IMG/VR virus record: IMGVR_UViG_3300005856_000048
Span: 1 to 14,966 of that record
Length of the DNA: 14,966 bases
Reading direction: 5' to 3' (one strand)
Shown: piece after piece, positions 1 to 13,580 of the stretch
Layout of the letters: each line of letters begins with the position of its first letter
Position numbering within the stretch: position 1 is the stretch's first letter
Translations under genes and position numbers: made by a program
Notes under the pieces: model-generated
Seen by the model: the letters and a program-made list of their open reading frames with translations, nothing else
Database searches by the model: none
What the model was told of the DNA's origin: nothing

Positions 1-1898
1 CGTGTGAACCACCTGATGTATGCCCTTATTGCCACGTAGTCTTCCCACAGTTTAGCCCAGTCGTTGGGTATCCTCATTAATTGTATTATTTGCGGTAGCT
101 TATCCATGAATTGGGGTAAGTATTCACTTAACACGGGCATTTCTAAAATGGTGGGGTAGTATGGTGGGGAGTATGCCTTAACTAGGGCATTGGCGAAATC
201 AACGTCTATCCCGTTTGCTAACAATACCTGTAACGCATTCTCAGGTGTTGTTGCATGCCTACCTAGCCATATGCGGGCATAGGTTTCAAAGTTCCTTAGT
301 AAATATCTATGGTAGACTAGATTGGCTATGAATAGGAAGACTTCCCTTGCTTGCGGTGTTTCTCTCATTAACGTTGTTAATTCATCAATGTACTTGGGGA
401 TCTCTGTCTTTGGAATAAGCCCCATGCCTATTATACCCAGGATCCTATACAACGCATACCTTGCGTAGTACCTTATCCTACGGAATGTACCAATCAGTTG
501 CTCTACCTCAAAGTATTTGGCTATGGCGTCGTTGAATGCTGAATCCCAAGTTAGGTGCATTTCCGCACCTGTAATGGATTTGTACAGTGGTGCGTAGTAT
601 TTGTCTAACACAGTTGTGACGTAGCCAACCATATCGTTTATTGAGTCACTGATACCGATCAAGTAGTCTCTGACTCCTGCTAGTAATGCCCTAAACATGT
701 TGCTCATATACGTGTTCACCTTATCCATTAATGCCCTTAGCATTAGTAACTTAGATTCTGGTTCAATGTACCTCACGGGTGCGTTTAACCAACCCGTCAC
801 CCATTTCTGATTATACATGTCAAAGTAGGCTACGTGGACTGATACGGGGAACATGTTGTTCATCATTTGCAATGTGACGGGTATTAACTCTATGTTTTCT
901 CTAATTAGATTCAGCAATCCTGTCCTTAGTAGGGTTTTTGATGCTGTAGTGACGTCAAAGACGGCTCTTAGGGCTATTAATGGGGCTACGTATGGGTGGA
1001 AGCCCCTGGCCATTAACACGTTTGTGACGTAATCAGTGTATATTTGGATTGGTGACGTGGCTTGGGGTTCCACAACCTTACCCAGCACGTCATACATTGT
1101 TGTCTCGTTTGTGATCTTATACTCACGTTCATAGTAGTCCCATATACCATGCCTAACCAGGTGTTCAATGTCGGTTCTGTCTAATAGGTGTGCTGATTGG
1201 TCTATGATTAACCATGCATCGGATGTGTATGATTGACCTGTCCTTGGGTCGTTGATCCATGCAAAGTGAGCTCTACCATGCCATTTCTGATATTCCGCTA
1301 GGGCTAGCAGGGCTAGGTTGTATTGGAAGTTGAGTTTAGCGGGTACCTGTGGGGTGAATGCGTTGATGATTTTAGCTTCAGCTTCCGCAAAGGTTTGGAC
1401 TTCAGGTGGTGGGACATACCAGGCGAATCCCGATAATGCACGCATTGTAAAGTCCCATACCTGGGTTGCTGATGGCAATTCATAAGCCCTTAGGTAGTAC
1501 ATGTAGGCTACGTCGGGTGGAACACCCCTGGCCCACATTGCCTTGACAAACGACTGATATGCTAATGCGGGTTGCTGATTAGGTGGTGCTGATGCAGGTA
1601 GGAATAAGTCCCTTAGCATGAATTCAACCAGGTCGTGGGTAGTGGGTAATTCGAATAGTGGGGCAACAGGTAGGTATCTTACGTTGCCGAATTTATCAAC
1701 CACGGTGATTAAATTGTTTTGTATTTCCTTCCTGTAGTCACTTAATGCCTGGTTGGCAACGTCTATGGATGTGAATGCTGATGGTAATGCTATTGTCTTT
1801 GCAATGAACCAGTATGGGAAGCCTCTATAAATCATTGTATTTGCCACGTTGTTAATGTTCTGTGTGATATCAAACCTACGGGCTATGTCAAGTAATTC
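1..1898 (-). CDS. C-terminal part of the giant minor structural protein (alpha-helical repeats); runs off the left edge
   Basis: Manual translation gives a frame open from 1913 to base 1 (~630 codons): ELLDIARRFDITQNINNVANTMIYRGFPYW...LFELPTTHDLVEFMLRD...YELPSATQVWDFTMR...AIRAYIRWFT. Not in the ORF track, probably because it has no stop in the window. Independent starts are possible (GTG 1847, ATG 1835), but it more likely continues the 774-aa ORF via a -1 shift. Confidence 0.85.
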
Positions 1899-4207
1899 GT
1901 ATGTGACGGTAGTTCAAAGGGCATGTTGCCCATTCCCATTGAGTAGAATGTTAGCCACCACACGTAGCGCCACAGGTAGCGTAGCGGTTCCATGAATGCT
2001 AATGTTCCGCTTAGCGCCATGCCTCTTCCCAATTCATCGCCTAGTTTACCCAATAGATCACCGATTGGTTGTAGTAGTTTCCCTAGTTCTAAACGGATCT
2101 TTAGACCTATGCCTAATGGTGTTAAATCAACTTCCTGTGTCCCAGTTGCTGACCCTATTTTCTCGATTAGTTTCCCTAGGAAGTATATGGATGATGCTAT
2201 TGCGGTTGATATAATAGCCACCGCACCGAATGCGCCTGTTAGGTTTGGTATTGCTACTTTAACGGGGTCTACACCTGACTTTATTACGATGTATGGTTCA
2301 TTTTTGAACACGTCACGTGACATCATAGCGGGTATTTCGGTAATCATCACAGGTAGGAAGATGGCTTTCATTGCACCGTCCACAATACCCTTTGCGAAAT
2401 CCGTTATTCCACTTCCCAAGTTGCCTAAGCCACCTGCTAGCGTTTGCGCTAGTTTAATGAAACCTGAGCCTAGTCCCTGGATTTCATTGACTATCCAGTT
2501 GAATATGTCCTTTAGCGTGTCGTAGAATGACTTAAACGCATTCTCAAACCCCTTGCCGATTGACTCAAATAATTTGATTATTTGTTGCACTACTGGGTTT
2601 TTGCCTAGATTCTCAAAGAACTTGGCTACGTTGCTGAAGAAATCGGTGATTGCCTTGATGTTGATTGTTTTTAGGAAGTCCATGAATGCCTTATACACGG
2701 CGTCAAAGACTTCCTTGGGTATTTGGGATATTGTTTTTGGTAGGTTTTCTATTGCCTTTATGAATCCCTGGAATGACTTATTGATATCATTGAATAGTGT
2801 TTCAAACCCTGAACCTATGGTTCCCAAGTTGCTTACAATTGAACCACTGATTGACGTGAATGTTGCGGTTAATGCATTTGCGAATCCCTGGGCTTCCTTT
2901 ATGAATTTCTCAAAGTTTGACTCAATGCCTTTAACAAATCCCTCAATGTCCTTGCCTAGGGTTGTGAAAAAGCCCGTTACCTTACTGTATGCTTCCTTTC
3001 CGAAATTCTCAATGTCTTTGCCTATTGTTGTAAAGAATGATTCAACGTCTTTAATGAATCCTTGGATGTACTTGCCTGCATCTGTTAATGCACCGTATAT
3101 CATCTTGCCGAATGATTCAACGTCACTGATGAATTGTTTGAAATACTTGCCTGCTGTGTCTATGAAATCGCTAATGTACTTGCCGATTGCCGTGAATGTG
3201 TTCCTTATGTCGTTGCCTATGGTGGTGAACACATTGCTTAACGTGGATGCGAATGACTCAATGCCGTGTAGAATATCCGTTGCTATGTGGGTGAATGTTG
3301 ATTGGACTGTGGATGCGAATGACGTTATTGCGTTGATTGCCGTGGTTATGAATGACTCGATGCGTGGGAATACTATGGATTGTAATACGTGTGCGAATTG
3401 GGATAGTGCGTTTTGTATGGTTGATCCGATTGAGGTTATTGCGTTGATGATACTCGATACTGCATTTTGCACTACACCGCTGATCTGTGTTATGATGCCA
3501 CTTAGCGTTGATGTGAATGATGCGAATGCGGTTTGGATTGTTGATGCAATGCTTGATATTGTTGAAATCACACCTGATAGTGCGTTTTGGATTGATGAAA
3601 CTATGCTTGTTATTGTTGATACTATGCCCGATAGTGTTGATTGGATTGTTGATGATAATTGTGTGGCTAAGCCACCGATTGCCGATGCCAGGTTACTGAA
3701 TTGGCTTGATATTGTCGTTGCAATGCTACTTAAGCTTGATGCCAAGTTACTGAGCCCTGAGCTAACGGTTGATGCAATGCCTGATAATGCCGATGTTATG
3801 CTTGATGCCACGGATTGGAACGTGTTAGCTAAGTTACCTAACCCTGATTGGATTCCGCTTAATGCGCTTGATAATGATGAACTCAATGAGTTTAAAGCCG
3901 ATTGGACTGTTGATGATAGTGTTGATATTCCACTTGATACGTAACTCACGACACTGTTGATTGCGTTTATAACGGGCTGTAGCAATTGCTGAATCCCAGT
4001 TGTAATGTAGTTTGCTAGGTTTGTTAATTGTTGCGCTAGCCAATTTTCTAATTGCCCGATTGGATCAGTTAAGCCACCATATTCAACAATCGCATTGTTG
4101 ATGTCTTCCATTGTTAATTGTGATAATGCCTTCTCAATGATGCCGTTGTTTAGGTTGTTTTGGATTAGGATGCGTATTTCATCGGGATTAAAGAATGGGG
4201 TGTCCAT
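1883..4207 (-). CDS. N-terminal part of giant tape-measure-like / terminal filament protein (774 aa up to the frameshift)
   Basis: Long amphipathic S/T/A/G-rich, then F/K/D/E-rich quasi-repeats (TAGKYFKQFISDVESF / DAGKYIQGFIKDVESF; TIGKDIENFGK / TLGKDIEGFVK), followed by hydrophobic segments. ATG overlaps the upstream stop (TAATG). Confidence 0.8.
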   Translation of the reverse strand: MDTPFFNPDEIRILIQNNLNNGIIEKALSQLTMEDINNAIVEYGGLTDPIGQLENWLAQQLTNLANYITTGIQQLLQPVINAINSVVSYVSSGISTLSSTVQSALNSLSSSLSSALSGIQSGLGNLANTFQSVASSITSALSGIASTVSSGLSNLASSLSSIATTISSQFSNLASAIGGLATQLSSTIQSTLSGIVSTITSIVSSIQNALSGVISTISSIASTIQTAFASFTSTLSGIITQISGVVQNAVSSIINAITSIGSTIQNALSQFAHVLQSIVFPRIESFITTAINAITSFASTVQSTFTHIATDILHGIESFASTLSNVFTTIGNDIRNTFTAIGKYISDFIDTAGKYFKQFISDVESFGKMIYGALTDAGKYIQGFIKDVESFFTTIGKDIENFGKEAYSKVTGFFTTLGKDIEGFVKGIESNFEKFIKEAQGFANALTATFTSISGSIVSNLGTIGSGFETLFNDINKSFQGFIKAIENLPKTISQIPKEVFDAVYKAFMDFLKTINIKAITDFFSNVAKFFENLGKNPVVQQIIKLFESIGKGFENAFKSFYDTLKDIFNWIVNEIQGLGSGFIKLAQTLAGGLGNLGSGITDFAKGIVDGAMKAIFLPVMITEIPAMMSRDVFKNEPYIVIKSGVDPVKVAIPNLTGAFGAVAIISTAIASSIYFLGKLIEKIGSATGTQEVDLTPLGIGLKIRLELGKLLQPIGDLLGKLGDELGRGMALSGTLAFMEPLRYLWRYVWWLTFYSMGMGNMPFELPSHTNYLT

Positions 4208-4434: not shown

Positions 4435-4457
4435 GGTTTTGAGAATTAATAAAGTTC

Positions 4458-4470
4458 AATTTATTTTTAA
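4458..4470 (-). promoter_or_regulatory. Conserved promoter motif TTAAAAATAAATT
   Basis: Exact consensus copy, 24 nt upstream of GTG 4434. Confidence 0.75.
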
Positions 4471-4493: not shown

Positions 4494-5180
4494 TTATTTG
4501 GATGATCCAGTTGTCGTTTGACCTTGGCTTGGTTGCTGTGTTGGGAAAGGGGATGATGCTGGGGCTATGGTTGTTACTTCCACCTCAGGTGGCTTGGCGT
4601 ATTGTGCAAGTGTAGCCTTTAGTCTATCGCTCATTAATTGACGGATGTCATTATTAACTAACTGGAGACCGTAAAGTGACAGTAGCGTATTCATAAAGTA
4701 AATATTGTTATCAACCTGCTTATTGTAAATGTTTAAGTACCTGTCCTCAGTATAATGCCTATGCATAGTATCCTGTTGAATAAGTGAGAAATACTTATTA
4801 TCCATATCCATAGTGTGACGGGTTGATTCAGCATTGAGAGCCGTGGCTACGTTAAGAGCCGTGGTGGTAGCGGCCACCAACTGATTCATGTTATTAGTCT
4901 GTGAGTTTAGTGCTTGGATTTGGGCTTGGGTTAGCTGGGTTTGGTTGTTTGTGGTGTTGATGGACATGAATATGTAGACACCCAGTGCTATCACCACGGC
5001 TAGGATTAGTATGATGATGCCAGCTGTTATGGGGTCTATGTAGATAACATACCCATTGGATGTTGTTGTGGATTGTGCAAACACTATGTGTGGGTTAGCC
5101 ACCATTAACATGGCTATTATTGACATTACTACCGCTAACTTGCGCTTATCCATGCTTAGGAGACCTGTGAGTGGGTTCAT
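4494..5180 (-). CDS. Membrane protein (228 aa): signal-peptide-like N-terminus, TM helix, Q/N-rich helical region
   Basis: MDKRKLAVVMSIIAMLMVANPHIVFA|QS signal-like segment; hydrophobic ITAGIIILILAVVIALGVYIFMSI; P/T/Q/S-rich tail. Confidence 0.8.
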   Translation of the reverse strand: MNPLTGLLSMDKRKLAVVMSIIAMLMVANPHIVFAQSTTTSNGYVIYIDPITAGIIILILAVVIALGVYIFMSINTTNNQTQLTQAQIQALNSQTNNMNQLVAATTTALNVATALNAESTRHTMDMDNKYFSLIQQDTMHRHYTEDRYLNIYNKQVDNNIYFMNTLLSLYGLQLVNNDIRQLMSDRLKATLAQYAKPPEVEVTTIAPASSPFPTQQPSQGQTTTGSSK

Positions 5181-5206
5181 ATCGTTTTTAATTGACTGTG
5201 TTGTGT

Positions 5207-5219
5207 AATTTATTTTTAA
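5207..5219 (-). promoter_or_regulatory. Conserved promoter motif TTAAAAATAAATT
   Basis: Exact copy, 27 nt upstream of ATG 5180. Confidence 0.75.
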
Positions 5220-5228
5220 TCTGGGTAA

Positions 5229-6005
5229 CTATGGTTTGTTTAGCGGTGTTGGGTAGACCATTGAGCCACTGCACCCTGGGATTCCTGCTTTATCTATGAA
5301 CTGTATTAATAATGCGGGTTCTAGGAGGGCATACTTATCATCACCGTAATTGACAAAGGACTTCCCAACGTCTAAGCCGATTGCGTGTGTTACATAACCC
5401 CAGTATGTGCAATTTAACGTGAGTTTAACATTAACAAGCGCCTTCAAGTCATCCTCAGGCATGTTGGGTGTTGCTAACGCTATGCCTAGGCAATTTTGTT
5501 GGTTAGCGTATAGACAGTTGCCTGCAACGTAGATGGCTCTGGGGTATGGTTCATCGGTTTGGAAGTTGATTGGCGTTGGTGCTTGGAATGTGGCGTAGCC
5601 GTAGTCGTATGGTGACGGTATTTCAATGTTGAAAAAGAGTAGGATGTTCCATATCCATTGTGGGAAGGTGATGGGGTATGTGATTTGAATGTTGCTTAGC
5701 CTGTATGTTGCGTTGCCGTATTGTAAAGTGTCTACGCATTTCATGACATGCCCAGCACTAACAACCGTGTTATTCATTATTTCATAAACTGAGCCACCGC
5801 ATGAACCAGTCAATTTTGGGTATTCACCGTTTGCGTGAAAAAAATCACTCTCACTAATAATAACCTTCCTTCCCTTTTTATCATAGAGTCCATCGGCTTT
5901 TTGAATGAATATTCCCTTGGTTACTAGGTCTTGGATTGTTATGCCGTCCTTAAGCTGAATAACTATGGTTTTGTCTCCTTGGAATAGGGTTTTGAACCGT
6001 GGCAT
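5229..6005 (-). CDS. Chymotrypsin/trypsin-like serine protease (258 aa)
   Basis: SCGGS, VVSAGHV (His86), YDYGY (Asp134) and PGCSGSMVY (Ser246) occur in canonical order and spacing. GGTGA SD at 6009-6013. Confidence 0.75.
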   Translation of the reverse strand: MPRFKTLFQGDKTIVIQLKDGITIQDLVTKGIFIQKADGLYDKKGRKVIISESDFFHANGEYPKLTGSCGGSVYEIMNNTVVSAGHVMKCVDTLQYGNATYRLSNIQITYPITFPQWIWNILLFFNIEIPSPYDYGYATFQAPTPINFQTDEPYPRAIYVAGNCLYANQQNCLGIALATPNMPEDDLKALVNVKLTLNCTYWGYVTHAIGLDVGKSFVNYGDDKYALLEPALLIQFIDKAGIPGCSGSMVYPTPLNKP

Positions 6006-6028
6006 GGTTCACCTTACCCATGCCGTGT

Positions 6029-6041
6029 AATTTATTTTTAA
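6029..6041 (-). promoter_or_regulatory. Conserved promoter motif TTAAAAATAAATT
   Basis: Exact copy, 24 nt upstream of ATG 6005. 6025-6042 is identical over 18 nt to 5203-5220. Confidence 0.75.
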
Positions 6042-6068: not shown

Positions 6069-7112
6069 TTAATCAATAAGTGATAATGCAATTGTTGGCA
6101 TGATACCGCTTGGTGGTGCGTCGTAAAAGGCAATTGTGTATGTTGTGTAGCTTGATGTTCCACTGCTTGGGTGTCCCGTATAAAATGATACCTGTGTTAA
6201 TGTTGATAATGTAAATGTACTATCTGTGGCTGAGAGAGACTTCCCAGTGAGTGATTCATATGTATACAGGTTTGATGTAGTTGTGTAGTTCCACATGAAA
6301 TAGCCGTAGAATAATTTATTCAGTATGGCGCTGTCACTTACGCTAACTATGCCATTCCATGAGCCATTAACAATCTTTGCCAAGCCATCAGCTGTATTTC
6401 CTACCCCCCACCAGTATGCTTGATATACATTCATGCTACTTGTGTTAATATTATTACCATAGAGGAATCCATATTCAGCGCCACCATTTGTTCCTACACT
6501 GTTTACAAGTGCCCATGTGCGTCCTATGATACCTGTTGATGGTACATTGGATGGTGTTGCTATGAGACCAGTAGAATTCTGGCTACTGGTTACTGTCATT
6601 GTTATCCCGTTGTTTACGCTTATTGTGCCATTACCGTACGTAGTCCATATGCTTGATAGTGTTGTTCCCTTGAAATTATCATAGATTAGGAATACGTTTT
6701 TGCCGTTGTCAAGTTGCCCGTAGGATAAGCCTAGGTAGTTTTGCCCGTAGATTGCGTTAATGCCTGCTATGTTGCCGTCTACTAGTTGTTGCATGGTGTC
6801 TATGATCATGTAAAGCGTGTAGGTGGAATTAGCACCAATGGATGGTGTCTTAACGAACCACCTGTGGTATGCCCCATCATACCCATCATACCATGAGTAT
6901 GCCTGGGTATTTGCCTGTGGGTCATAGAAAATAGTGTTTAGCGGTACCGCATAGGGGTCAATACCAACACCAAGTAGTGAAAGCAAGTAACTATGGTCTA
7001 TTTTGATTTCCTGGACATGTGGGTTTACGGTTGCAGTTGATTGACCGTTTGATATAGTTACCTTGATTACACGCTTCCTAACAGGTAGTATGGTGTATTC
7101 TAGGTCTGGCAT
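6069..7112 (-). CDS. DUF2341-like protein with ConA-like beta-sandwich; putative receptor-binding protein (347 aa)
   Basis: FYDPQANTQAYSWYDG...WFVKTPSIGANSTYTLYM fits the DUF2341 pattern. DNGKNVFLIYDNFKGTTLSSIW is a typical linker into a lectin-like domain. C-terminal PPSGIMP. Confidence 0.7.
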   Translation of the reverse strand: MPDLEYTILPVRKRVIKVTISNGQSTATVNPHVQEIKIDHSYLLSLLGVGIDPYAVPLNTIFYDPQANTQAYSWYDGYDGAYHRWFVKTPSIGANSTYTLYMIIDTMQQLVDGNIAGINAIYGQNYLGLSYGQLDNGKNVFLIYDNFKGTTLSSIWTTYGNGTISVNNGITMTVTSSQNSTGLIATPSNVPSTGIIGRTWALVNSVGTNGGAEYGFLYGNNINTSSMNVYQAYWWGVGNTADGLAKIVNGSWNGIVSVSDSAILNKLFYGYFMWNYTTTSNLYTYESLTGKSLSATDSTFTLSTLTQVSFYTGHPSSGTSSYTTYTIAFYDAPPSGIMPTIALSLID

Positions 7113-7151: not shown

Positions 7152-8933
7152 TCACTGTATGAATCCCTGGGTTAGTGTTGTTGATGGCATGTAGCCCTTG
7201 GGTACAAACTTGGCGTGGTATAGGTTCAGTGGGTTGTTGAACCACACCATTAATGCGTCCTGTGGTGCATCAACGTTAGCGTAGTGTAGGTCAAACCTGT
7301 GGGTTCCGAATGGTATGGTTGCCGTGTATGGTGTTGATTGCATGCTTTGATTTGTCCATGAGCTTAAAATGTTGCTTCCGCCTGATGCCCAATTAGCCCC
7401 ATCACTACCTAACTCACCTGTTAGGCTTAGCCACACGTTGATTGCATCATCAACAAGGACATACATTGTTGATTGTTTACTTGCCTGTACCCAACCGATG
7501 AATTTAGCTAGCCACGTGTAATTGGGGCTTATAGGTGAACCTACACCGCATGAATAGCCTGCTTCCCATGCACTTAACATGTTGGCTTGGCTTGTGCATG
7601 AACTTGATCTACAGTTTGAGTATGAGCCACCGCTTACGGTGCATGGTATTGTGGATGTGAATAGTGATGGTACTGTTTCACAACATTGTTGTAATGTAAC
7701 TGTGAGCGTCCACCCAGTTGAGCTAAACGTAAAGGATTGCGTATTCAAACTTGTTCCAAGCAATGGTTCAACTGTTGGTGAATACGCTACAGGAGGAACG
7801 GTTTGTGATGTGTTAGCCCATATGCTGTATAACAACCCCTGATCCATAATGTTACCGATGTTATCAGTGCTCAATGAACCAGTGATTGTTGAATTAATAC
7901 CGTAATTAACACCGTCAATTGTTGTTGTGTTAGTGGGTATCATGTATATTTGTGTTGATCCACTGTTAAGTTGATTAATCATTGTGTCCGTTGCCTTTAA
8001 CCAAACCACAGCTGTGCCATTGTTGTTTTTTGCATCAACCTCAACCCAGAATGGTACCTTATTCCCACTTGCATCTAGGATGTAAACGTTGCTTAAATCC
8101 TCATTAACGTTAATGTAATTTGACGGTTGAATGGCTATGGGTATTTGCTGGCCACTGGGGTATGTGTAGCCTGGGTTAGTTAATTTAATGACTATGGGTA
8201 GCCACTGTGTCATTGAATTAAGCATTTCATCAATTGCAAGTAGCGCCTCAGTGAGTTTATTCCAATCATGACTAGTCACAATATCGAAAGCTAACTTTCC
8301 GCTCATTTGCATGGGAACGTAGGCAATGGGGTTGAATATGCCTTGTAATTGGGTTGGAACCGTGTAATTGTAGCCGTAAAGGTATGTGAAATAGTAAATG
8401 AACGTGTTGTATGCAAGTAGAATGTGGTTCCAAATTGCATTGTAATGGTCGTGGCTAACTGGGTCACCTACCGTGACGGGTTTAAGCGTGTTCAACATGT
8501 CCATTATCACATTGTACTTTGACGTGAGGTACATTCCCGTGTTTTGATTAACCAGGTTGATTAATTGAATCAGTTGGTAAAGGTATTTGAGTTGGTTAAG
8601 CAGTATGGTGCGCCTATTGTTCCACACGGATGGTGGAATTGTTTGATTGGGGCAATGTGAATAGACTGTTACCCCACCTGAGAGTTGCGAGAAAATGTAG
8701 GGTATTGGGATGCAGACGGGTAGACTAAATGTGATTTTTGAACCAGGGGTTATGACACTCGATAGTGATGGTGGGAGTAGGGATGGTGGTATTGACGTTA
8801 CTACCTGCCTGGTTGGTGTTATTAATGTTTCACTTCCCACTCCTGAATCGCTTAGTGAGAATGCCGTGATTGTGACGCTTACACCACCGCTCGATGCGTC
8901 ACTTGTTACTACTGGATACGCTACGGTGCTCAT
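7152..8933 (-). CDS. Multidomain fibre/adhesin (593 aa): helical repeats, DUF2341, Cys-rich segment, PA14-like domain
   Basis: EDLSNVYILDASGNKVPFWVE...AVVWLK...IYM (DUF2341). AKFIGWV...MYVLVDDAINVWL...GTHRFDLHY...LMVWF (PA14-like, DD at 495-496). Start overlaps the upstream stop (ATGA). Confidence 0.75.
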   Translation of the reverse strand: MSTVAYPVVTSDASSGGVSVTITAFSLSDSGVGSETLITPTRQVVTSIPPSLLPPSLSSVITPGSKITFSLPVCIPIPYIFSQLSGGVTVYSHCPNQTIPPSVWNNRRTILLNQLKYLYQLIQLINLVNQNTGMYLTSKYNVIMDMLNTLKPVTVGDPVSHDHYNAIWNHILLAYNTFIYYFTYLYGYNYTVPTQLQGIFNPIAYVPMQMSGKLAFDIVTSHDWNKLTEALLAIDEMLNSMTQWLPIVIKLTNPGYTYPSGQQIPIAIQPSNYINVNEDLSNVYILDASGNKVPFWVEVDAKNNNGTAVVWLKATDTMINQLNSGSTQIYMIPTNTTTIDGVNYGINSTITGSLSTDNIGNIMDQGLLYSIWANTSQTVPPVAYSPTVEPLLGTSLNTQSFTFSSTGWTLTVTLQQCCETVPSLFTSTIPCTVSGGSYSNCRSSSCTSQANMLSAWEAGYSCGVGSPISPNYTWLAKFIGWVQASKQSTMYVLVDDAINVWLSLTGELGSDGANWASGGSNILSSWTNQSMQSTPYTATIPFGTHRFDLHYANVDAPQDALMVWFNNPLNLYHAKFVPKGYMPSTTLTQGFIQ

Positions 8934-10426: not shown

Positions 10427-10450
10427 AGCGTTGTAAAATTGAATAAAACT

Positions 10451-10463
10451 AATTTATTTTTAA
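10451..10463 (-). promoter_or_regulatory. Conserved promoter motif TTAAAAATAAATT
   Basis: Exact copy, 25 nt upstream of ATG 10426. Confidence 0.75.
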
Positions 10464-13168: not shown

Positions 13169-13555
13169 TTAGTATGATAGACCGCTAACACCCAATGCCT
13201 GGGCAATGGCCTGTAGTATGGTTGGGTTAGCACCGTAAGCGGTCTGGAAGTAAGACGTGAGACCGTTCACCTCATTGGCAAGTGCTGGACCTGTGATACG
13301 TTGTGTCGCATGCCAAACCTTTTCACCAAAGGCTATGTAAACGGCTCTAGTTGGGCCAGCTACACCATACTGATCGAGTATGCCACCTACCAGGAACTGT
13401 ACATTTGCAACGCTTACTATACCCTCCTGTGCCCTGCTTACGGCAACTGGCTGTACTTCAGTGAACCTGGTTTGAACTACTGTAGGGTCGTATTTGGCCT
13501 GCCACTTAGCGAGCCTTGCATTTCCTGGCTTGGGTAAGCCCCTACCCCTGGCCAT
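13169..13555 (-). CDS. Major capsid protein, SIRV2-type alpha-helical fold (128 aa from ATG 13555)
   Basis: MARG...RLAKWQAKY-DPTV...ILDQYGVAGPTRAVYIAFGEKV...GPALANEVNGL...AYGANPTILQAI parallels the recalled SIRV coat protein (RYAKWQAKF...VLTQYGITGPNRAIYQGFGLKV...GPALVNMINGL...AFNANPQVL). ATG 13555 is preferred over the track's TTG 13564. Confidence 0.93.
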   Translation of the reverse strand: MARGRGLPKPGNARLAKWQAKYDPTVVQTRFTEVQPVAVSRAQEGIVSVANVQFLVGGILDQYGVAGPTRAVYIAFGEKVWHATQRITGPALANEVNGLTSYFQTAYGANPTILQAIAQALGVSGLSY

Positions 13556-13580
13556 ATTGGTCAAAAACCTTATCCGCCAT

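What the first reader, a model, noticed from the sequence alone, without database searches (positions are those of the whole stretch)
5229..6005. Stand-alone chymotrypsin-like protease with atypical GCSGS nucleophile motif among adsorption genes
Seen: His86 (5748-5750), Asp134 (5604-5606) and Ser246 (5268-5270); G-C-S-G-S in place of GDSGG; six Cys; a ~65-aa basic N-terminal extension; no signal peptide; its own copy of the promoter. Known: clan PA proteases use H-D-S in this order. I do not recall such a protease as a standard rudivirus gene, and helical capsids need no scaffold-cleaving protease. Inference: it matures fibre or giant proteins, or is virion-borne and cuts the host S-layer during entry or exit.
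Basis: partly seen in the sequence, partly recalled or inferred. Interest (0 to 1): 0.7.

Follow-up and report, generated by a model that had tools for sequence, protein, structure and literature searches.

The report
Divergent serine protease in rod-virus
A gene in the structural-gene block of a hot-spring archaeal rod-shaped virus encodes a very divergent chymotrypsin-fold serine protease. Standard rudiviruses lack it. Its only detectable relatives are virion proteins of other filamentous archaeal viruses, so it is a testable candidate for a particle-borne enzyme.

Summary
ORF 5229-6005 (-) encodes 258 aa with His86, Asp134, Ser246 in G-C-S-G-S, six Cys, no N-terminal hydrophobic segment, and its own TATA-like box.

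- **Conservation:** the three catalytic residues and the motif are invariant in 17 metagenomic homologues down to 26% identity.
- **Sequence searches:** Pfam, PHROG, NCBIfam and PDB sequence searches do not recognise the protein.
- **Fold:** an AlphaFold2 model (pLDDT 89) gives clan PA proteases for all 50 Foldseek PDB hits listed.
- **Viral relatives:** the best viral matches are an AFV6 protein, PFV1 virion protein VP3 and a TTV1 protein. Profile comparison links the family (70%, E 4e-5) to the betalipothrixvirus ORF267b/ORF269 "virion structural protein", which carries a canonical GDSGG.
- **Distribution:** classic rudiviruses lack the gene. So do 185,579 representative prokaryotic genomes.
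- **Unusual features:** Cys precedes the nucleophile. A folded N-terminal domain of about 55 aa is present. The chain ends 7-18 residues after the Ser in most members, so the C-terminal barrel cannot have the canonical strand order.

Protease identity is well supported. Triad geometry could not be measured because no coordinates are returned. Virion association and the substrate are inferences. I rate it a new, divergent variant of a known kind, of moderate to high interest.

The parts
5229..6005 (-). Complete ORF, 258 aa plus stop codon: divergent clan PA serine protease
   Evidence: About 25 homologue clusters at 26-95% identity.
6025..6041 (-). TATA-like promoter box TTAAAAATAAATTACAC, ending 19 nt upstream of the ATG
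   Evidence: identical copy at 5203-5219, and 5 matches against 0.21 expected; conserved at the same spacing upstream of the orthologues in L002, L004, L018 and L019.
5841..6005 (-). N-terminal domain, residues 1-55 (strand-strand-helix-strands); function unknown, possibly a pro-domain or docking domain
   Evidence: pLDDT 77-93, E4-9 E13-18 H24-29 E34-36 E39-41 E47-50. Conserved across the family. The AFV6 ORF267b model starts with a similar strand-strand-helix-strand pattern.
5817..5840 (-). Variable, low-confidence linker, residues 56-63
   Evidence: pLDDT below 50 at residues 56-60. This is the most indel-rich region of alignment A2.
5232..5816 (-). Protease domain, residues 64-258: two groups of six strands
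   Evidence: secondary structure. Foldseek hits are clan PA proteases.
5790..5801 (-). C69-G-G-S72 motif on the strand before the catalytic His. G71 and S72 are invariant. C69 co-varies with C90.
   Evidence: hhalign aligns GSV...TNWHV with the E. coli DegP/Q/S His-motif region.
5748..5750 (-). His86, predicted general base
   Evidence: Invariant in 17 of 17 sequences. Aligns with the TAWH His of the AFV family and with the TNxHV motif of DegP/Q/S.
5604..5606 (-). Asp134, predicted third triad member, immediately before strand 135-139
   Evidence: Invariant in 17 of 17 sequences. Aligns with DYDVAI of the AFV family.
5262..5276 (-). G244-C-S-G-S248 nucleophile motif; Ser246 = 5268-5270
   Evidence: Invariant in 17 of 17 sequences. 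Aligns with PGDSGG of AFV6 ORF267b.
5232..5267 (-). Very short C-terminal tail: 12 residues and one strand (249-252) after the nucleophile
   Evidence: 7-18 residues after the Ser in 13 of 17 members. E. coli DegS has about 50 residues of protease domain after its Ser (sequence printed).

Best explanation
The ORF encodes an active, highly divergent chymotrypsin-fold (clan PA) serine endopeptidase.

**Predicted catalytic machinery**
- Ser246 is the nucleophile, His86 the base, and Asp134 orients the His.
- The backbone NH groups of Gly244 and Ser246 would form the oxyanion hole.

**Architecture**
- The protein is made without a signal peptide from its own TATA promoter, of the same type as its neighbours in the structural and terminal-protein gene block.
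- It consists of an N-terminal domain of about 55 aa, a flexible linker and the protease domain.
- The protease domain is stabilised by conserved cysteines. C69-C90 is a likely 'histidine-loop' disulfide.

**Most likely role**
It is assembled into the virion as a minor component, like its remote relatives in betalipothrixviruses. There it would cleave either a viral structural protein (possibly itself, at the linker) or a host envelope protein at entry.

**Shown:** gene, motif conservation, fold class, remote homology, gene neighbourhood, promoter box.

**Inferred:** catalytic activity, disulfides, virion packaging, substrate.
For: **Conservation.** H86, D134 and GCSGS are invariant down to 26% identity.

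**Fold.**
- The AF2 model has pLDDT 89.3 and pTM 0.74, with two sets of six strands. His86 opens a short helix and Asp134 precedes a strand, which from my knowledge matches chymotrypsin.
- All 50 Foldseek PDB hits listed are clan PA proteases. They include NAL1 (4e-4), Rv3671c (9e-4), 3C proteases, HtrA/DegQ and kallikrein.

**Viral relatives.**
- The top viral hits are AFV6 A7WKJ8 (1.8e-6), PFV1 VP3 (3.3e-5) and the TTV1 20.2 kDa protein (4.6e-4).
- hhalign against the AFV6 ORF267b family gives 69.8% probability, E 4.1e-5, with all three catalytic motifs in register and PGCSGS aligned to PGDSGG.
- That family weakly matches Pfam Trypsin_2 in 6 of 13 members and streptogrisins A and B.
- Its own model again hits NAL1, streptogrisins and alpha-lytic protease.
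- AFV3, AFV6, AFV8 and AFV9 homologues are annotated as virion structural proteins.

**Cysteines.** C69 and C90 are both present in 11 sequences and both absent in 6, and never occur singly.

**Context.**
- The gene order MCP, GT..., DUF2341 proteins, protease, TM protein, giant protein is conserved in L002, L004 and L005.
- The neighbouring 347-aa protein is homologous to SIRV2 ORF564.
- The promoter box is conserved upstream of the orthologues.
Against: - No sequence-profile library recognises the protein. Pfam, PHROG, NCBIfam and PDB give nothing significant. Across the 17 members, one weakly hits Trypsin (E 0.06) and one Trypsin_2 (E 0.26).
- Foldseek scores are modest: E around 1e-3 to 1e-4 against the PDB, TM 0.3-0.45, and high rmsd.
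- Triad geometry was not measured.
- The chain ends 12 residues after Ser246, so the canonical last strands and the C-terminal helix are missing. My hhalign tests of a circular permutation were inconclusive.
- Virion association rests on remote homologues only. The homology call is 70%, not above 95%.
- PFV1 VP3 is a major matrix or sheath protein. A purely architectural role for this fold in filamentous archaeal viruses is therefore possible.
- No substrate evidence exists.
Confidence: 0.6

Rival explanations
1. It is a cytoplasmic maturation protease. It is not packaged, and it trims the giant tape-measure-like protein or the DUF2341 terminal proteins during assembly.
For: It sits between the DUF2341 genes and the giant-protein gene, and it shares their promoter box. 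It has no signal peptide.
Against: Neither the tool searches nor the literature searches turned up any evidence of processing of rudiviral structural proteins. The remote homologues are themselves virion components. Distant family members occur in contigs of quite different gene content, with PolB and a MoxR-type ATPase and without these neighbours.
Confidence: 0.18
2. It is mainly an architectural virion protein that reuses the protease fold, like the matrix or sheath protein VP3 of PFV1. Catalysis would be lost, or used only once for self-processing.
For: Foldseek similarity to PFV1 VP3, which is a sheath protein. VP3 is 230 aa in BFVD but is reported as 18 kDa in virions, which would fit loss of an N-terminal domain. 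The window protein has a flexible linker after its N-terminal domain.
Against: Full invariance of the triad, Gly244 and Gly247 over deep divergence argues for retained catalysis. Rudiviruses have no envelope or matrix layer (PMC7189273). The VP3 sequence could not be retrieved to check its triad.
Confidence: 0.1
3. It is a host-directed protease acting inside the cell, degrading host defence, division or envelope-biogenesis proteins, or acting at egress.
For: It is cytoplasmic by sequence. The family occurs in at least three unrelated types of virus-like contig, as expected for a mobile accessory gene.
Against: The gene lies in the structural block, not the early or accessory regions. The remote homologues are virion proteins.
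Confidence: 0.08
4. It is a 3C-like cysteine protease that uses Cys245 (or Cys69 in the GSCGG stretch) as nucleophile.
For: Cys245 is invariant and adjacent to Ser246. The stretch G-S-C-G-G at residues 67-71 superficially resembles a GxCGG motif. 3C proteases appear among the Foldseek hits.
Against: If Cys245 were the nucleophile, the residue two positions before it would be Pro243, which has no backbone NH for the oxyanion hole. Alignment with PGDSGG places Ser246 on the Ser and Cys245 on the Asp. Cys69 precedes the His and is absent in 6 of 17 members.
Confidence: 0.03
5. It is not a protease, and the motif match is a chance resemblance.
For: No significant profile hit in any library.
Against: Motif invariance, a uniform list of clan PA structural hits from two independent models, and alignment to a family with a canonical GDSGG.
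Confidence: 0.02

Closest known systems
Betalipothrixvirus 'virion structural protein' family (AFV6 ORF267b, AFV3 and AFV8 homologues, AFV9 ORF269/gp40)
   Same: Similar length (266-277 aa). Both have an N-terminal domain with a strand-strand-helix-strand start, then a chymotrypsin-like domain with His, Asp and Ser motifs in register. In both, the chain ends a few residues after the nucleophile strand. Both are encoded near the capsid and glycosyltransferase genes of a filamentous archaeal virus.
   Different: Homology is only at profile level: 69.8% probability and about 20% identity. The AFV family has the canonical PGDSGG, where the window family has PGCSGS. AFV9 has Glu at the Asp position. 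The cysteine pattern differs. Hosts are Acidianus and Saccharolobus, and the virions are enveloped. The AFV family is not annotated as a protease in the records seen.
Bacterial S1 proteases of the streptogrisin / alpha-lytic protease type, and HtrA (DegP/Q/S)
   Same: H-D-S order, a GxSG nucleophile motif, and a GS...TN(W/x)HV histidine motif. The 'VNYG...PG(D/C)SG' stretch resembles streptogrisin A as aligned to the AFV family. All are structural hits.
   Different: The window protein reaches no significant sequence score. It lacks about 40-50 residues after the Ser and has about 30 extra residues (two strands plus a helix) between the Asp and the next canonical strand. It has no secretion signal. 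Cys replaces Asp or Asn before the Ser.
Rice NAL1 (NARROW LEAF 1) trypsin-like protease
   Same: It is the best PDB Foldseek hit for both the window model and the AFV6 model, over more than 300 aligned columns. The alignment may therefore include an N-terminal domain as well as the protease domain.
   Different: TM is only 0.27-0.40 and rmsd 11-20 Å. It is a plant protein with no detectable sequence similarity.
PFV1 VP3 (Tristromaviridae matrix/sheath protein) and the TTV1 20.2 kDa protein
   Same: Predicted structures are similar (E 3.3e-5 and 4.6e-4; TM relative to the TTV1 target is 0.52). Both come from filamentous viruses of Thermoproteales.
   Different: VP3 is a major structural layer under an envelope. 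Its sequences were not retrievable here, so conservation of the triad is unknown.
Putative trypsin-like serine protease of Aeropyrum coil-shaped virus (Spiraviridae)
   Same: It is a precedent for a stand-alone trypsin-like protease gene in a virus of hyperthermophilic Crenarchaeota (PMC7416610).
   Different: That one was recognisable enough to be annotated as a protease, it belongs to a different virus realm, and no relationship was tested here.

Membership tests
Clan PA (chymotrypsin-fold) peptidases | Two six-stranded beta-barrels | tested here: met
   The AF2 model (pLDDT 89) has strands 64-139 and 157-252 in two groups of six. All 50 Foldseek PDB hits listed are PA-clan proteases, though E-values (4e-4 and weaker) and TM scores (0.3-0.45) are modest.
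Clan PA (chymotrypsin-fold) peptidases | Catalytic residues in the order His, Asp, Ser/Cys, with His and Asp in barrel 1 and the nucleophile in barrel 2 | tested here: met
   H86, D134 and S246 are invariant in 17 of 17 sequences and align with the corresponding motifs of the AFV GDSGG family.
Clan PA (chymotrypsin-fold) peptidases | Nucleophile in a G-x-S/C-G turn, with Gly two positions before it for the oxyanion hole | tested here: met
   G244-C-S246-G247-S is invariant.
Clan PA (chymotrypsin-fold) peptidases | The triad side chains converge at the barrel interface | not testable with these tools
   Structure prediction returns no coordinates, and /data holds only FASTA files.
Clan PA (chymotrypsin-fold) peptidases | Canonical strand order of barrel 2: three strands and a C-terminal helix after the nucleophile | tested here: not met
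   Only 12 residues and one strand follow Ser246, and 7-18 residues do so in 13 of 17 members. Two extra strands and a helix (157-162, 173-178, 184-188) lie before the canonical first strand of barrel 2. Tests for a permutation were inconclusive.
MEROPS S1 / Pfam Trypsin (PF00089) and Trypsin_2 (PF13365) | HMM score above the gathering threshold | tested here: not met
   The window protein gives no hit. Across 17 members, one hits Trypsin (E 0.06) and one Trypsin_2 (E 0.26).
Betalipothrixvirus ORF267b/ORF269 virion protein family | Detectable homology over the protease domain | tested here: inconclusive
   hhalign gives 69.8% probability and E 4.1e-5 over 162 columns. Foldseek to AFV6 A7WKJ8 gives E 1.8e-6, the best viral hit. 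tblastn and phmmer find nothing.
Betalipothrixvirus ORF267b/ORF269 virion protein family | Presence in purified virions | not testable with these tools
   It is annotated so for AFV3, AFV6, AFV8 and AFV9. No data exist for the window's virus.
3C-like cysteine proteases | Cys nucleophile in G-x-C-G | tested here: not met
   Cys245 is followed by Ser, and the residue two positions before it is Pro243. The register with GDSGG puts Ser246 on the nucleophile.
Phage and herpesvirus-type capsid maturation (prohead/scaffold) proteases | Profile match to known prohead protease families | tested here: not met
   No PHROG or Pfam family is matched. The structural hits are PA clan only.

The most novel reading that the evidence does not exclude
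A single, ancient family of topologically rearranged chymotrypsin-fold proteins is a shared virion component across Adnaviria: rudivirus-like viruses of Thermoproteales, betalipothrixviruses, and the tristromavirus VP3 matrix protein. In it, the last strands of barrel 2 would be supplied from before the first strand, a circular permutation. In the catalytically intact members it would be the long-sought virion enzyme that opens the archaeal S-layer at entry, activated by self-removal of the N-terminal domain.
Probability: 0.12. Interest if true: 0.85.

Novelty: new variant of a known kind. Interest (0 to 1): 0.6.

Why it matters
No enzyme that degrades an archaeal S-layer was known for archaeal viruses as of a 2015 review (PMC4456609). 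The entry and maturation biochemistry of filamentous archaeal viruses is largely unknown.

This work supplies a conserved serine protease with an intact triad, encoded in the structural block of a rudivirus lineage. It is linked by profile and fold to proteins already annotated as virion components of lipothrixviruses and tristromaviruses. That makes it a concrete, expressible candidate for particle-borne proteolysis, whether the target is the host envelope or the virion itself.

It also shows that a protein annotated as a "virion structural protein" in AFV3, AFV6, AFV8 and AFV9 carries a canonical GDSGG catalytic motif.

Finally, it would add a hyperthermostable PA-clan family that standard profile libraries (Pfam, PHROG, NCBIfam) and sequence searches of the PDB do not recognise, with an unusual chain end directly after the nucleophile.

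Tried and rejected
- **Sequence libraries.** Pfam, PHROG and NCBIfam scans, and PDB sequence searches with the single protein and with the profile, gave nothing significant. The Phage_Coat_A hit (E 0.03) and the Mce hit (E 0.04) are noise.
- **Phage and genome collections.** megablast and tblastn against the phage collection found no match. A distant member gave only a spurious Streptococcus phage hit. The genome-contig scan found no relatives.
- **Spurious representative hit.** The 2373-aa hit P0033 in the representative search is a bacterial Cys-rich repeat protein.
- **AFV6 ORF267a.** Unrelated.
- **SIRV2 ORF309, the positional analogue.** Unrelated, with hhalign probability below 1%.
- **Circular-permutation hypothesis.** Moving residues of about 147-192 to the C-terminus did not raise hhalign scores against E. 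coli DegP/Q/S. A rotation scan gave no signal. The segment search gave only 'LGIALATPN' aligned to 'GIGFAIP' (E 0.11). The equivalent AFV segment mapped instead to a pre-Ser HtrA strand. The question is undecided.
- **PFV1, PFV2 and TTV1 sequences.** They could not be fetched by guessed accession.
- **Primary papers.** Rensen 2016 and Vestergaard 2008 are not held.
- **Literature searches.** Searches for a protease in rudiviruses or lipothrixviruses found nothing pertinent.

Full report
**1. The observation**

The minus-strand ORF 5229-6005 encodes 258 aa.

| Feature | Window coordinates |
|---|---|
| His86 | 5748-5750 |
| Asp134 | 5604-5606 |
| Ser246 | 5268-5270 |
| G244-C-S-G-S248 | 5262-5276 |

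- The six cysteines are at residues 69, 90, 164, 172, 199 and 245.
- The N-terminus is hydrophilic, with no signal peptide or TM segment.
- The box TTAAAAATAAATTACAC is found exactly at 6025-6041 (19 nt before the ATG) and at 5203-5219 before the next gene. Near-copies lie before the 75-aa and 213-aa genes. That is 5 matches against 0.21 expected.
- The same TATA-like box sits at the same spacing before the orthologous gene in four other contigs. The gene therefore very probably has its own promoter, of the type used by its neighbours.

**2. It is a real, conserved gene of a small virus-only family**

- Searches of about 5.8 billion and 1.8 billion proteins return only about 25 clusters, none with a functional name. 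One near-identical copy is filed as a hypothetical protein of Vulcanisaeta sp..
- No relative exists in 185,579 representative prokaryotic genomes.
- Across 17 sequences down to 26% identity, the following are invariant: G71, S72, H86, V87, D134, C164, C172, C199 and G244-C-S-G-S248.
- Cys69 and Cys90 are both present in 11 sequences and both absent in 6, and never occur singly. That is the pattern expected of a disulfide.
- Their positions, before the His strand and four residues after the His, recall the chymotrypsin Cys42-Cys58 bridge. This comparison is from my own knowledge.

**3. What the virus is**

- The window is IMG/VR contig UViG_3300005856_000048.
- ORF 13169-13564 (-) is a rudivirus-type capsid protein, 40-44% identical to those of 42 Sulfolobales rudivirus records.
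- It is followed by a GT4 glycosyltransferase and a block of genes in this order: 439, 101, 213, 155, 121, 593, 347, protease, 228 (membrane), 75 and the giant protein.
- Much the same block, with the protease in the corresponding place, recurs in L002, L004 and L005; the 593/347-aa pair is reordered in L002 and replaced in L004/L005.
- The 347-aa neighbour is homologous to SIRV2 ORF564 (DUF2341). The SIRV3 homologue is annotated as a structural protein.
- The protease therefore lies within the structural and terminal-protein module of a divergent rudivirus lineage.
- Classic rudiviruses lack it. tblastn against 50,697 records finds nothing, and SIRV2 ORF309, which sits in the equivalent position, is unrelated.

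**4. What the protein is**

Sequence profiles are blind to it. Across the family, one member hits Pfam Trypsin (E 0.06) and one Trypsin_2 (E 0.26).

The AlphaFold2 model built on 19 sequences is confident, with pLDDT 89.3 and pTM 0.74:
- Residues 1-55 form a small domain of strands plus one helix.
- Residues 56-60 are low-confidence. This is also the most indel-rich part of the alignment.
- Residues 64-252 form two groups of six strands.
- His86 opens a short helix and Asp134 immediately precedes a strand.

Foldseek against the PDB lists only clan PA proteases among its 50 listed hits. They include NAL1, Rv3671c, HtrA/DegQ, 3C proteases and kallikrein. Scores are modest, with E from 4e-4 and TM of 0.3-0.45.

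Against predicted viral structures, the best matches are:

| Target | Foldseek E-value |
|---|---|
| AFV6 A7WKJ8 | 1.8e-6 |
| PFV1 virion protein VP3 | 3.3e-5 |
| TTV1 20.2 kDa protein | 4.6e-4 |

Picorna-like 3C domains follow these.

**5. The link to lipothrixvirus virion proteins**

- AFV6 ORF267b (L001:22419-23222) ends in ...PGDSGGAVYI and carries TAWH and DYDVAI motifs.
- A 13-sequence profile of that family aligns with the window family at 69.8% probability and E 4.1e-5. The His, Asp and Ser motifs are all in register.
- Six of its 13 members weakly hit Pfam Trypsin_2, and the profile touches streptogrisins A and B in the PDB.
- Its own AF2 model (pLDDT 74) again retrieves NAL1, streptogrisins and alpha-lytic protease.
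- In RefSeq and GenBank, this protein is annotated as a virion structural protein in AFV3, AFV6, AFV8 and AFV9.
- PFV1 VP3 is the matrix or sheath protein of tristromavirus virions.

A chymotrypsin-fold protein is therefore a recurrent virion component of filamentous archaeal viruses. The window protein is a remote member of that group with an intact triad.

**6. How it probably works**

*Shown:* fold class, motif conservation and gene context.

*Inferred:*
- Ser246 attacks the scissile bond and His86/Asp134 relay the proton. The NH groups of Gly244 and Ser246 form the oxyanion hole.
- Cys245 cannot be the nucleophile. The residue two positions before it is Pro243, and it aligns with the Asp of GDSGG.
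- The invariant cysteines probably form disulfides that stabilise the enzyme at high temperature.
- The N-terminal domain plus flexible linker could be a docking module or a removable pro-domain. A weak hint is that VP3 is 230 aa in BFVD but reported as 18 kDa in virions.
- Packaging into the virion is the most likely fate, at about 45%. The substrate is open: self, viral terminal proteins or host envelope.

**7. What is unusual**

- Cys replaces the usual Asp, Asn or small residue before the Ser.
- The chain stops 12 residues after Ser246, and 7-18 residues after it in most members. DegS, by contrast, has about 50 residues of protease domain after its Ser.
- The Asp-to-next-canonical-strand segment is about 30 residues longer than usual and contains two strands and a helix.
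- This arrangement suggests a circular permutation or strand replacement in barrel 2. My sequence-based tests could not decide between these.
- The AFV family shares the abrupt C-terminus.

**8. Distribution**

Divergent members (26-31% identity) lie in contigs of other gene content:
- next to a family B DNA polymerase and a MoxR-type ATPase (L008, L022);
- next to GT, PDDEXK and ParB genes (L021).

The gene has therefore moved between archaeal virus lineages.

**9. Verdict**

- The reading as a PA-clan serine protease is well supported, at about 0.85. Triad geometry remains unmeasured.
- The functional inferences are untested. The virion-borne option is favoured through remote homologues.
- I found no report of this family, or of the protease nature of the AFV virion protein, in the searchable literature. 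A putative trypsin-like protease in Aeropyrum coil-shaped virus is a precedent.
- I rate it a new variant of a known kind, with interest 0.6.

Noticed in passing
window 3-4207 (-): The giant tape-measure-like gene is split. ORF 1883-4207 (774 aa) matches residues 1-604 of the 1416-aa protein of L002. A second stop-free frame at 3-1898 (632 codons, running off the window) matches residues 607-1237 at 75% identity. The frame changes near 1883-1898. Whether this is a real mutation, programmed frameshifting or an assembly error is unknown.
   Followed up: partly
L001:22419-23222 (AFV6 ORF267b); L011:3001-3810 (AFV9 ORF269): The betalipothrixvirus protein annotated as a 'virion structural protein' carries TAWH, DYD(E)VAI and PGDSGG motifs. 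Its model hits streptogrisins, alpha-lytic protease and NAL1. It is therefore a serine protease that the records seen do not annotate as one. AFV9 has Glu at the Asp position.
   Followed up: partly
window 4494-5180 (-): The 228-aa protein just downstream has hydrophobic N-terminal segments followed by a Q/N-rich helical region, and only weak Rz-like spanin PHROG hits (E 0.006-0.014). It may be a membrane or egress protein.
   Followed up: no
window 4454-4470, 5203-5219, 6025-6041, 10447-10463 (-): A shared TATA-like box TTAAAAATAAATT lies about 20-25 nt upstream of four start codons. This suggests short-leader or leaderless transcripts and a common temporal class. The same box is conserved upstream of the protease orthologues in L002, L004, L018 and L019.
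   Followed up: partly
L008:5932-6762, L022:366-1205, L021:1178-2044: Divergent members of the protease family sit in non-rudiviral contigs. In L008 and L022 they lie beside a family B DNA polymerase and DUF2153; L022 also carries a MoxR-type ATPase. In L021 the neighbours are GT, PDDEXK and ParB_N genes. This implies horizontal spread among archaeal viruses. Some of these members carry an extra C-terminal tail of 24-45 aa.
   Followed up: partly
window 6069-7112 (-) and 7152-8933 (-): Both large neighbours give weak DUF2341 hits. The 347-aa protein is homologous to part of SIRV2 ORF564. The 593-aa protein has no match in the phage collection. In L002 the protease gene precedes the 360-aa gene, whereas in the window it follows the 347-aa gene; I did not test whether the two proteins are homologues.
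   Followed up: partly
BFVD A0A140F3K9 (PFV1 VP3): VP3 is listed as 230 aa but is described as an 18 kDa virion protein. If the masses are accurate, about 60 residues are removed. That equals the size of the N-terminal domain in the window family.
   Followed up: no
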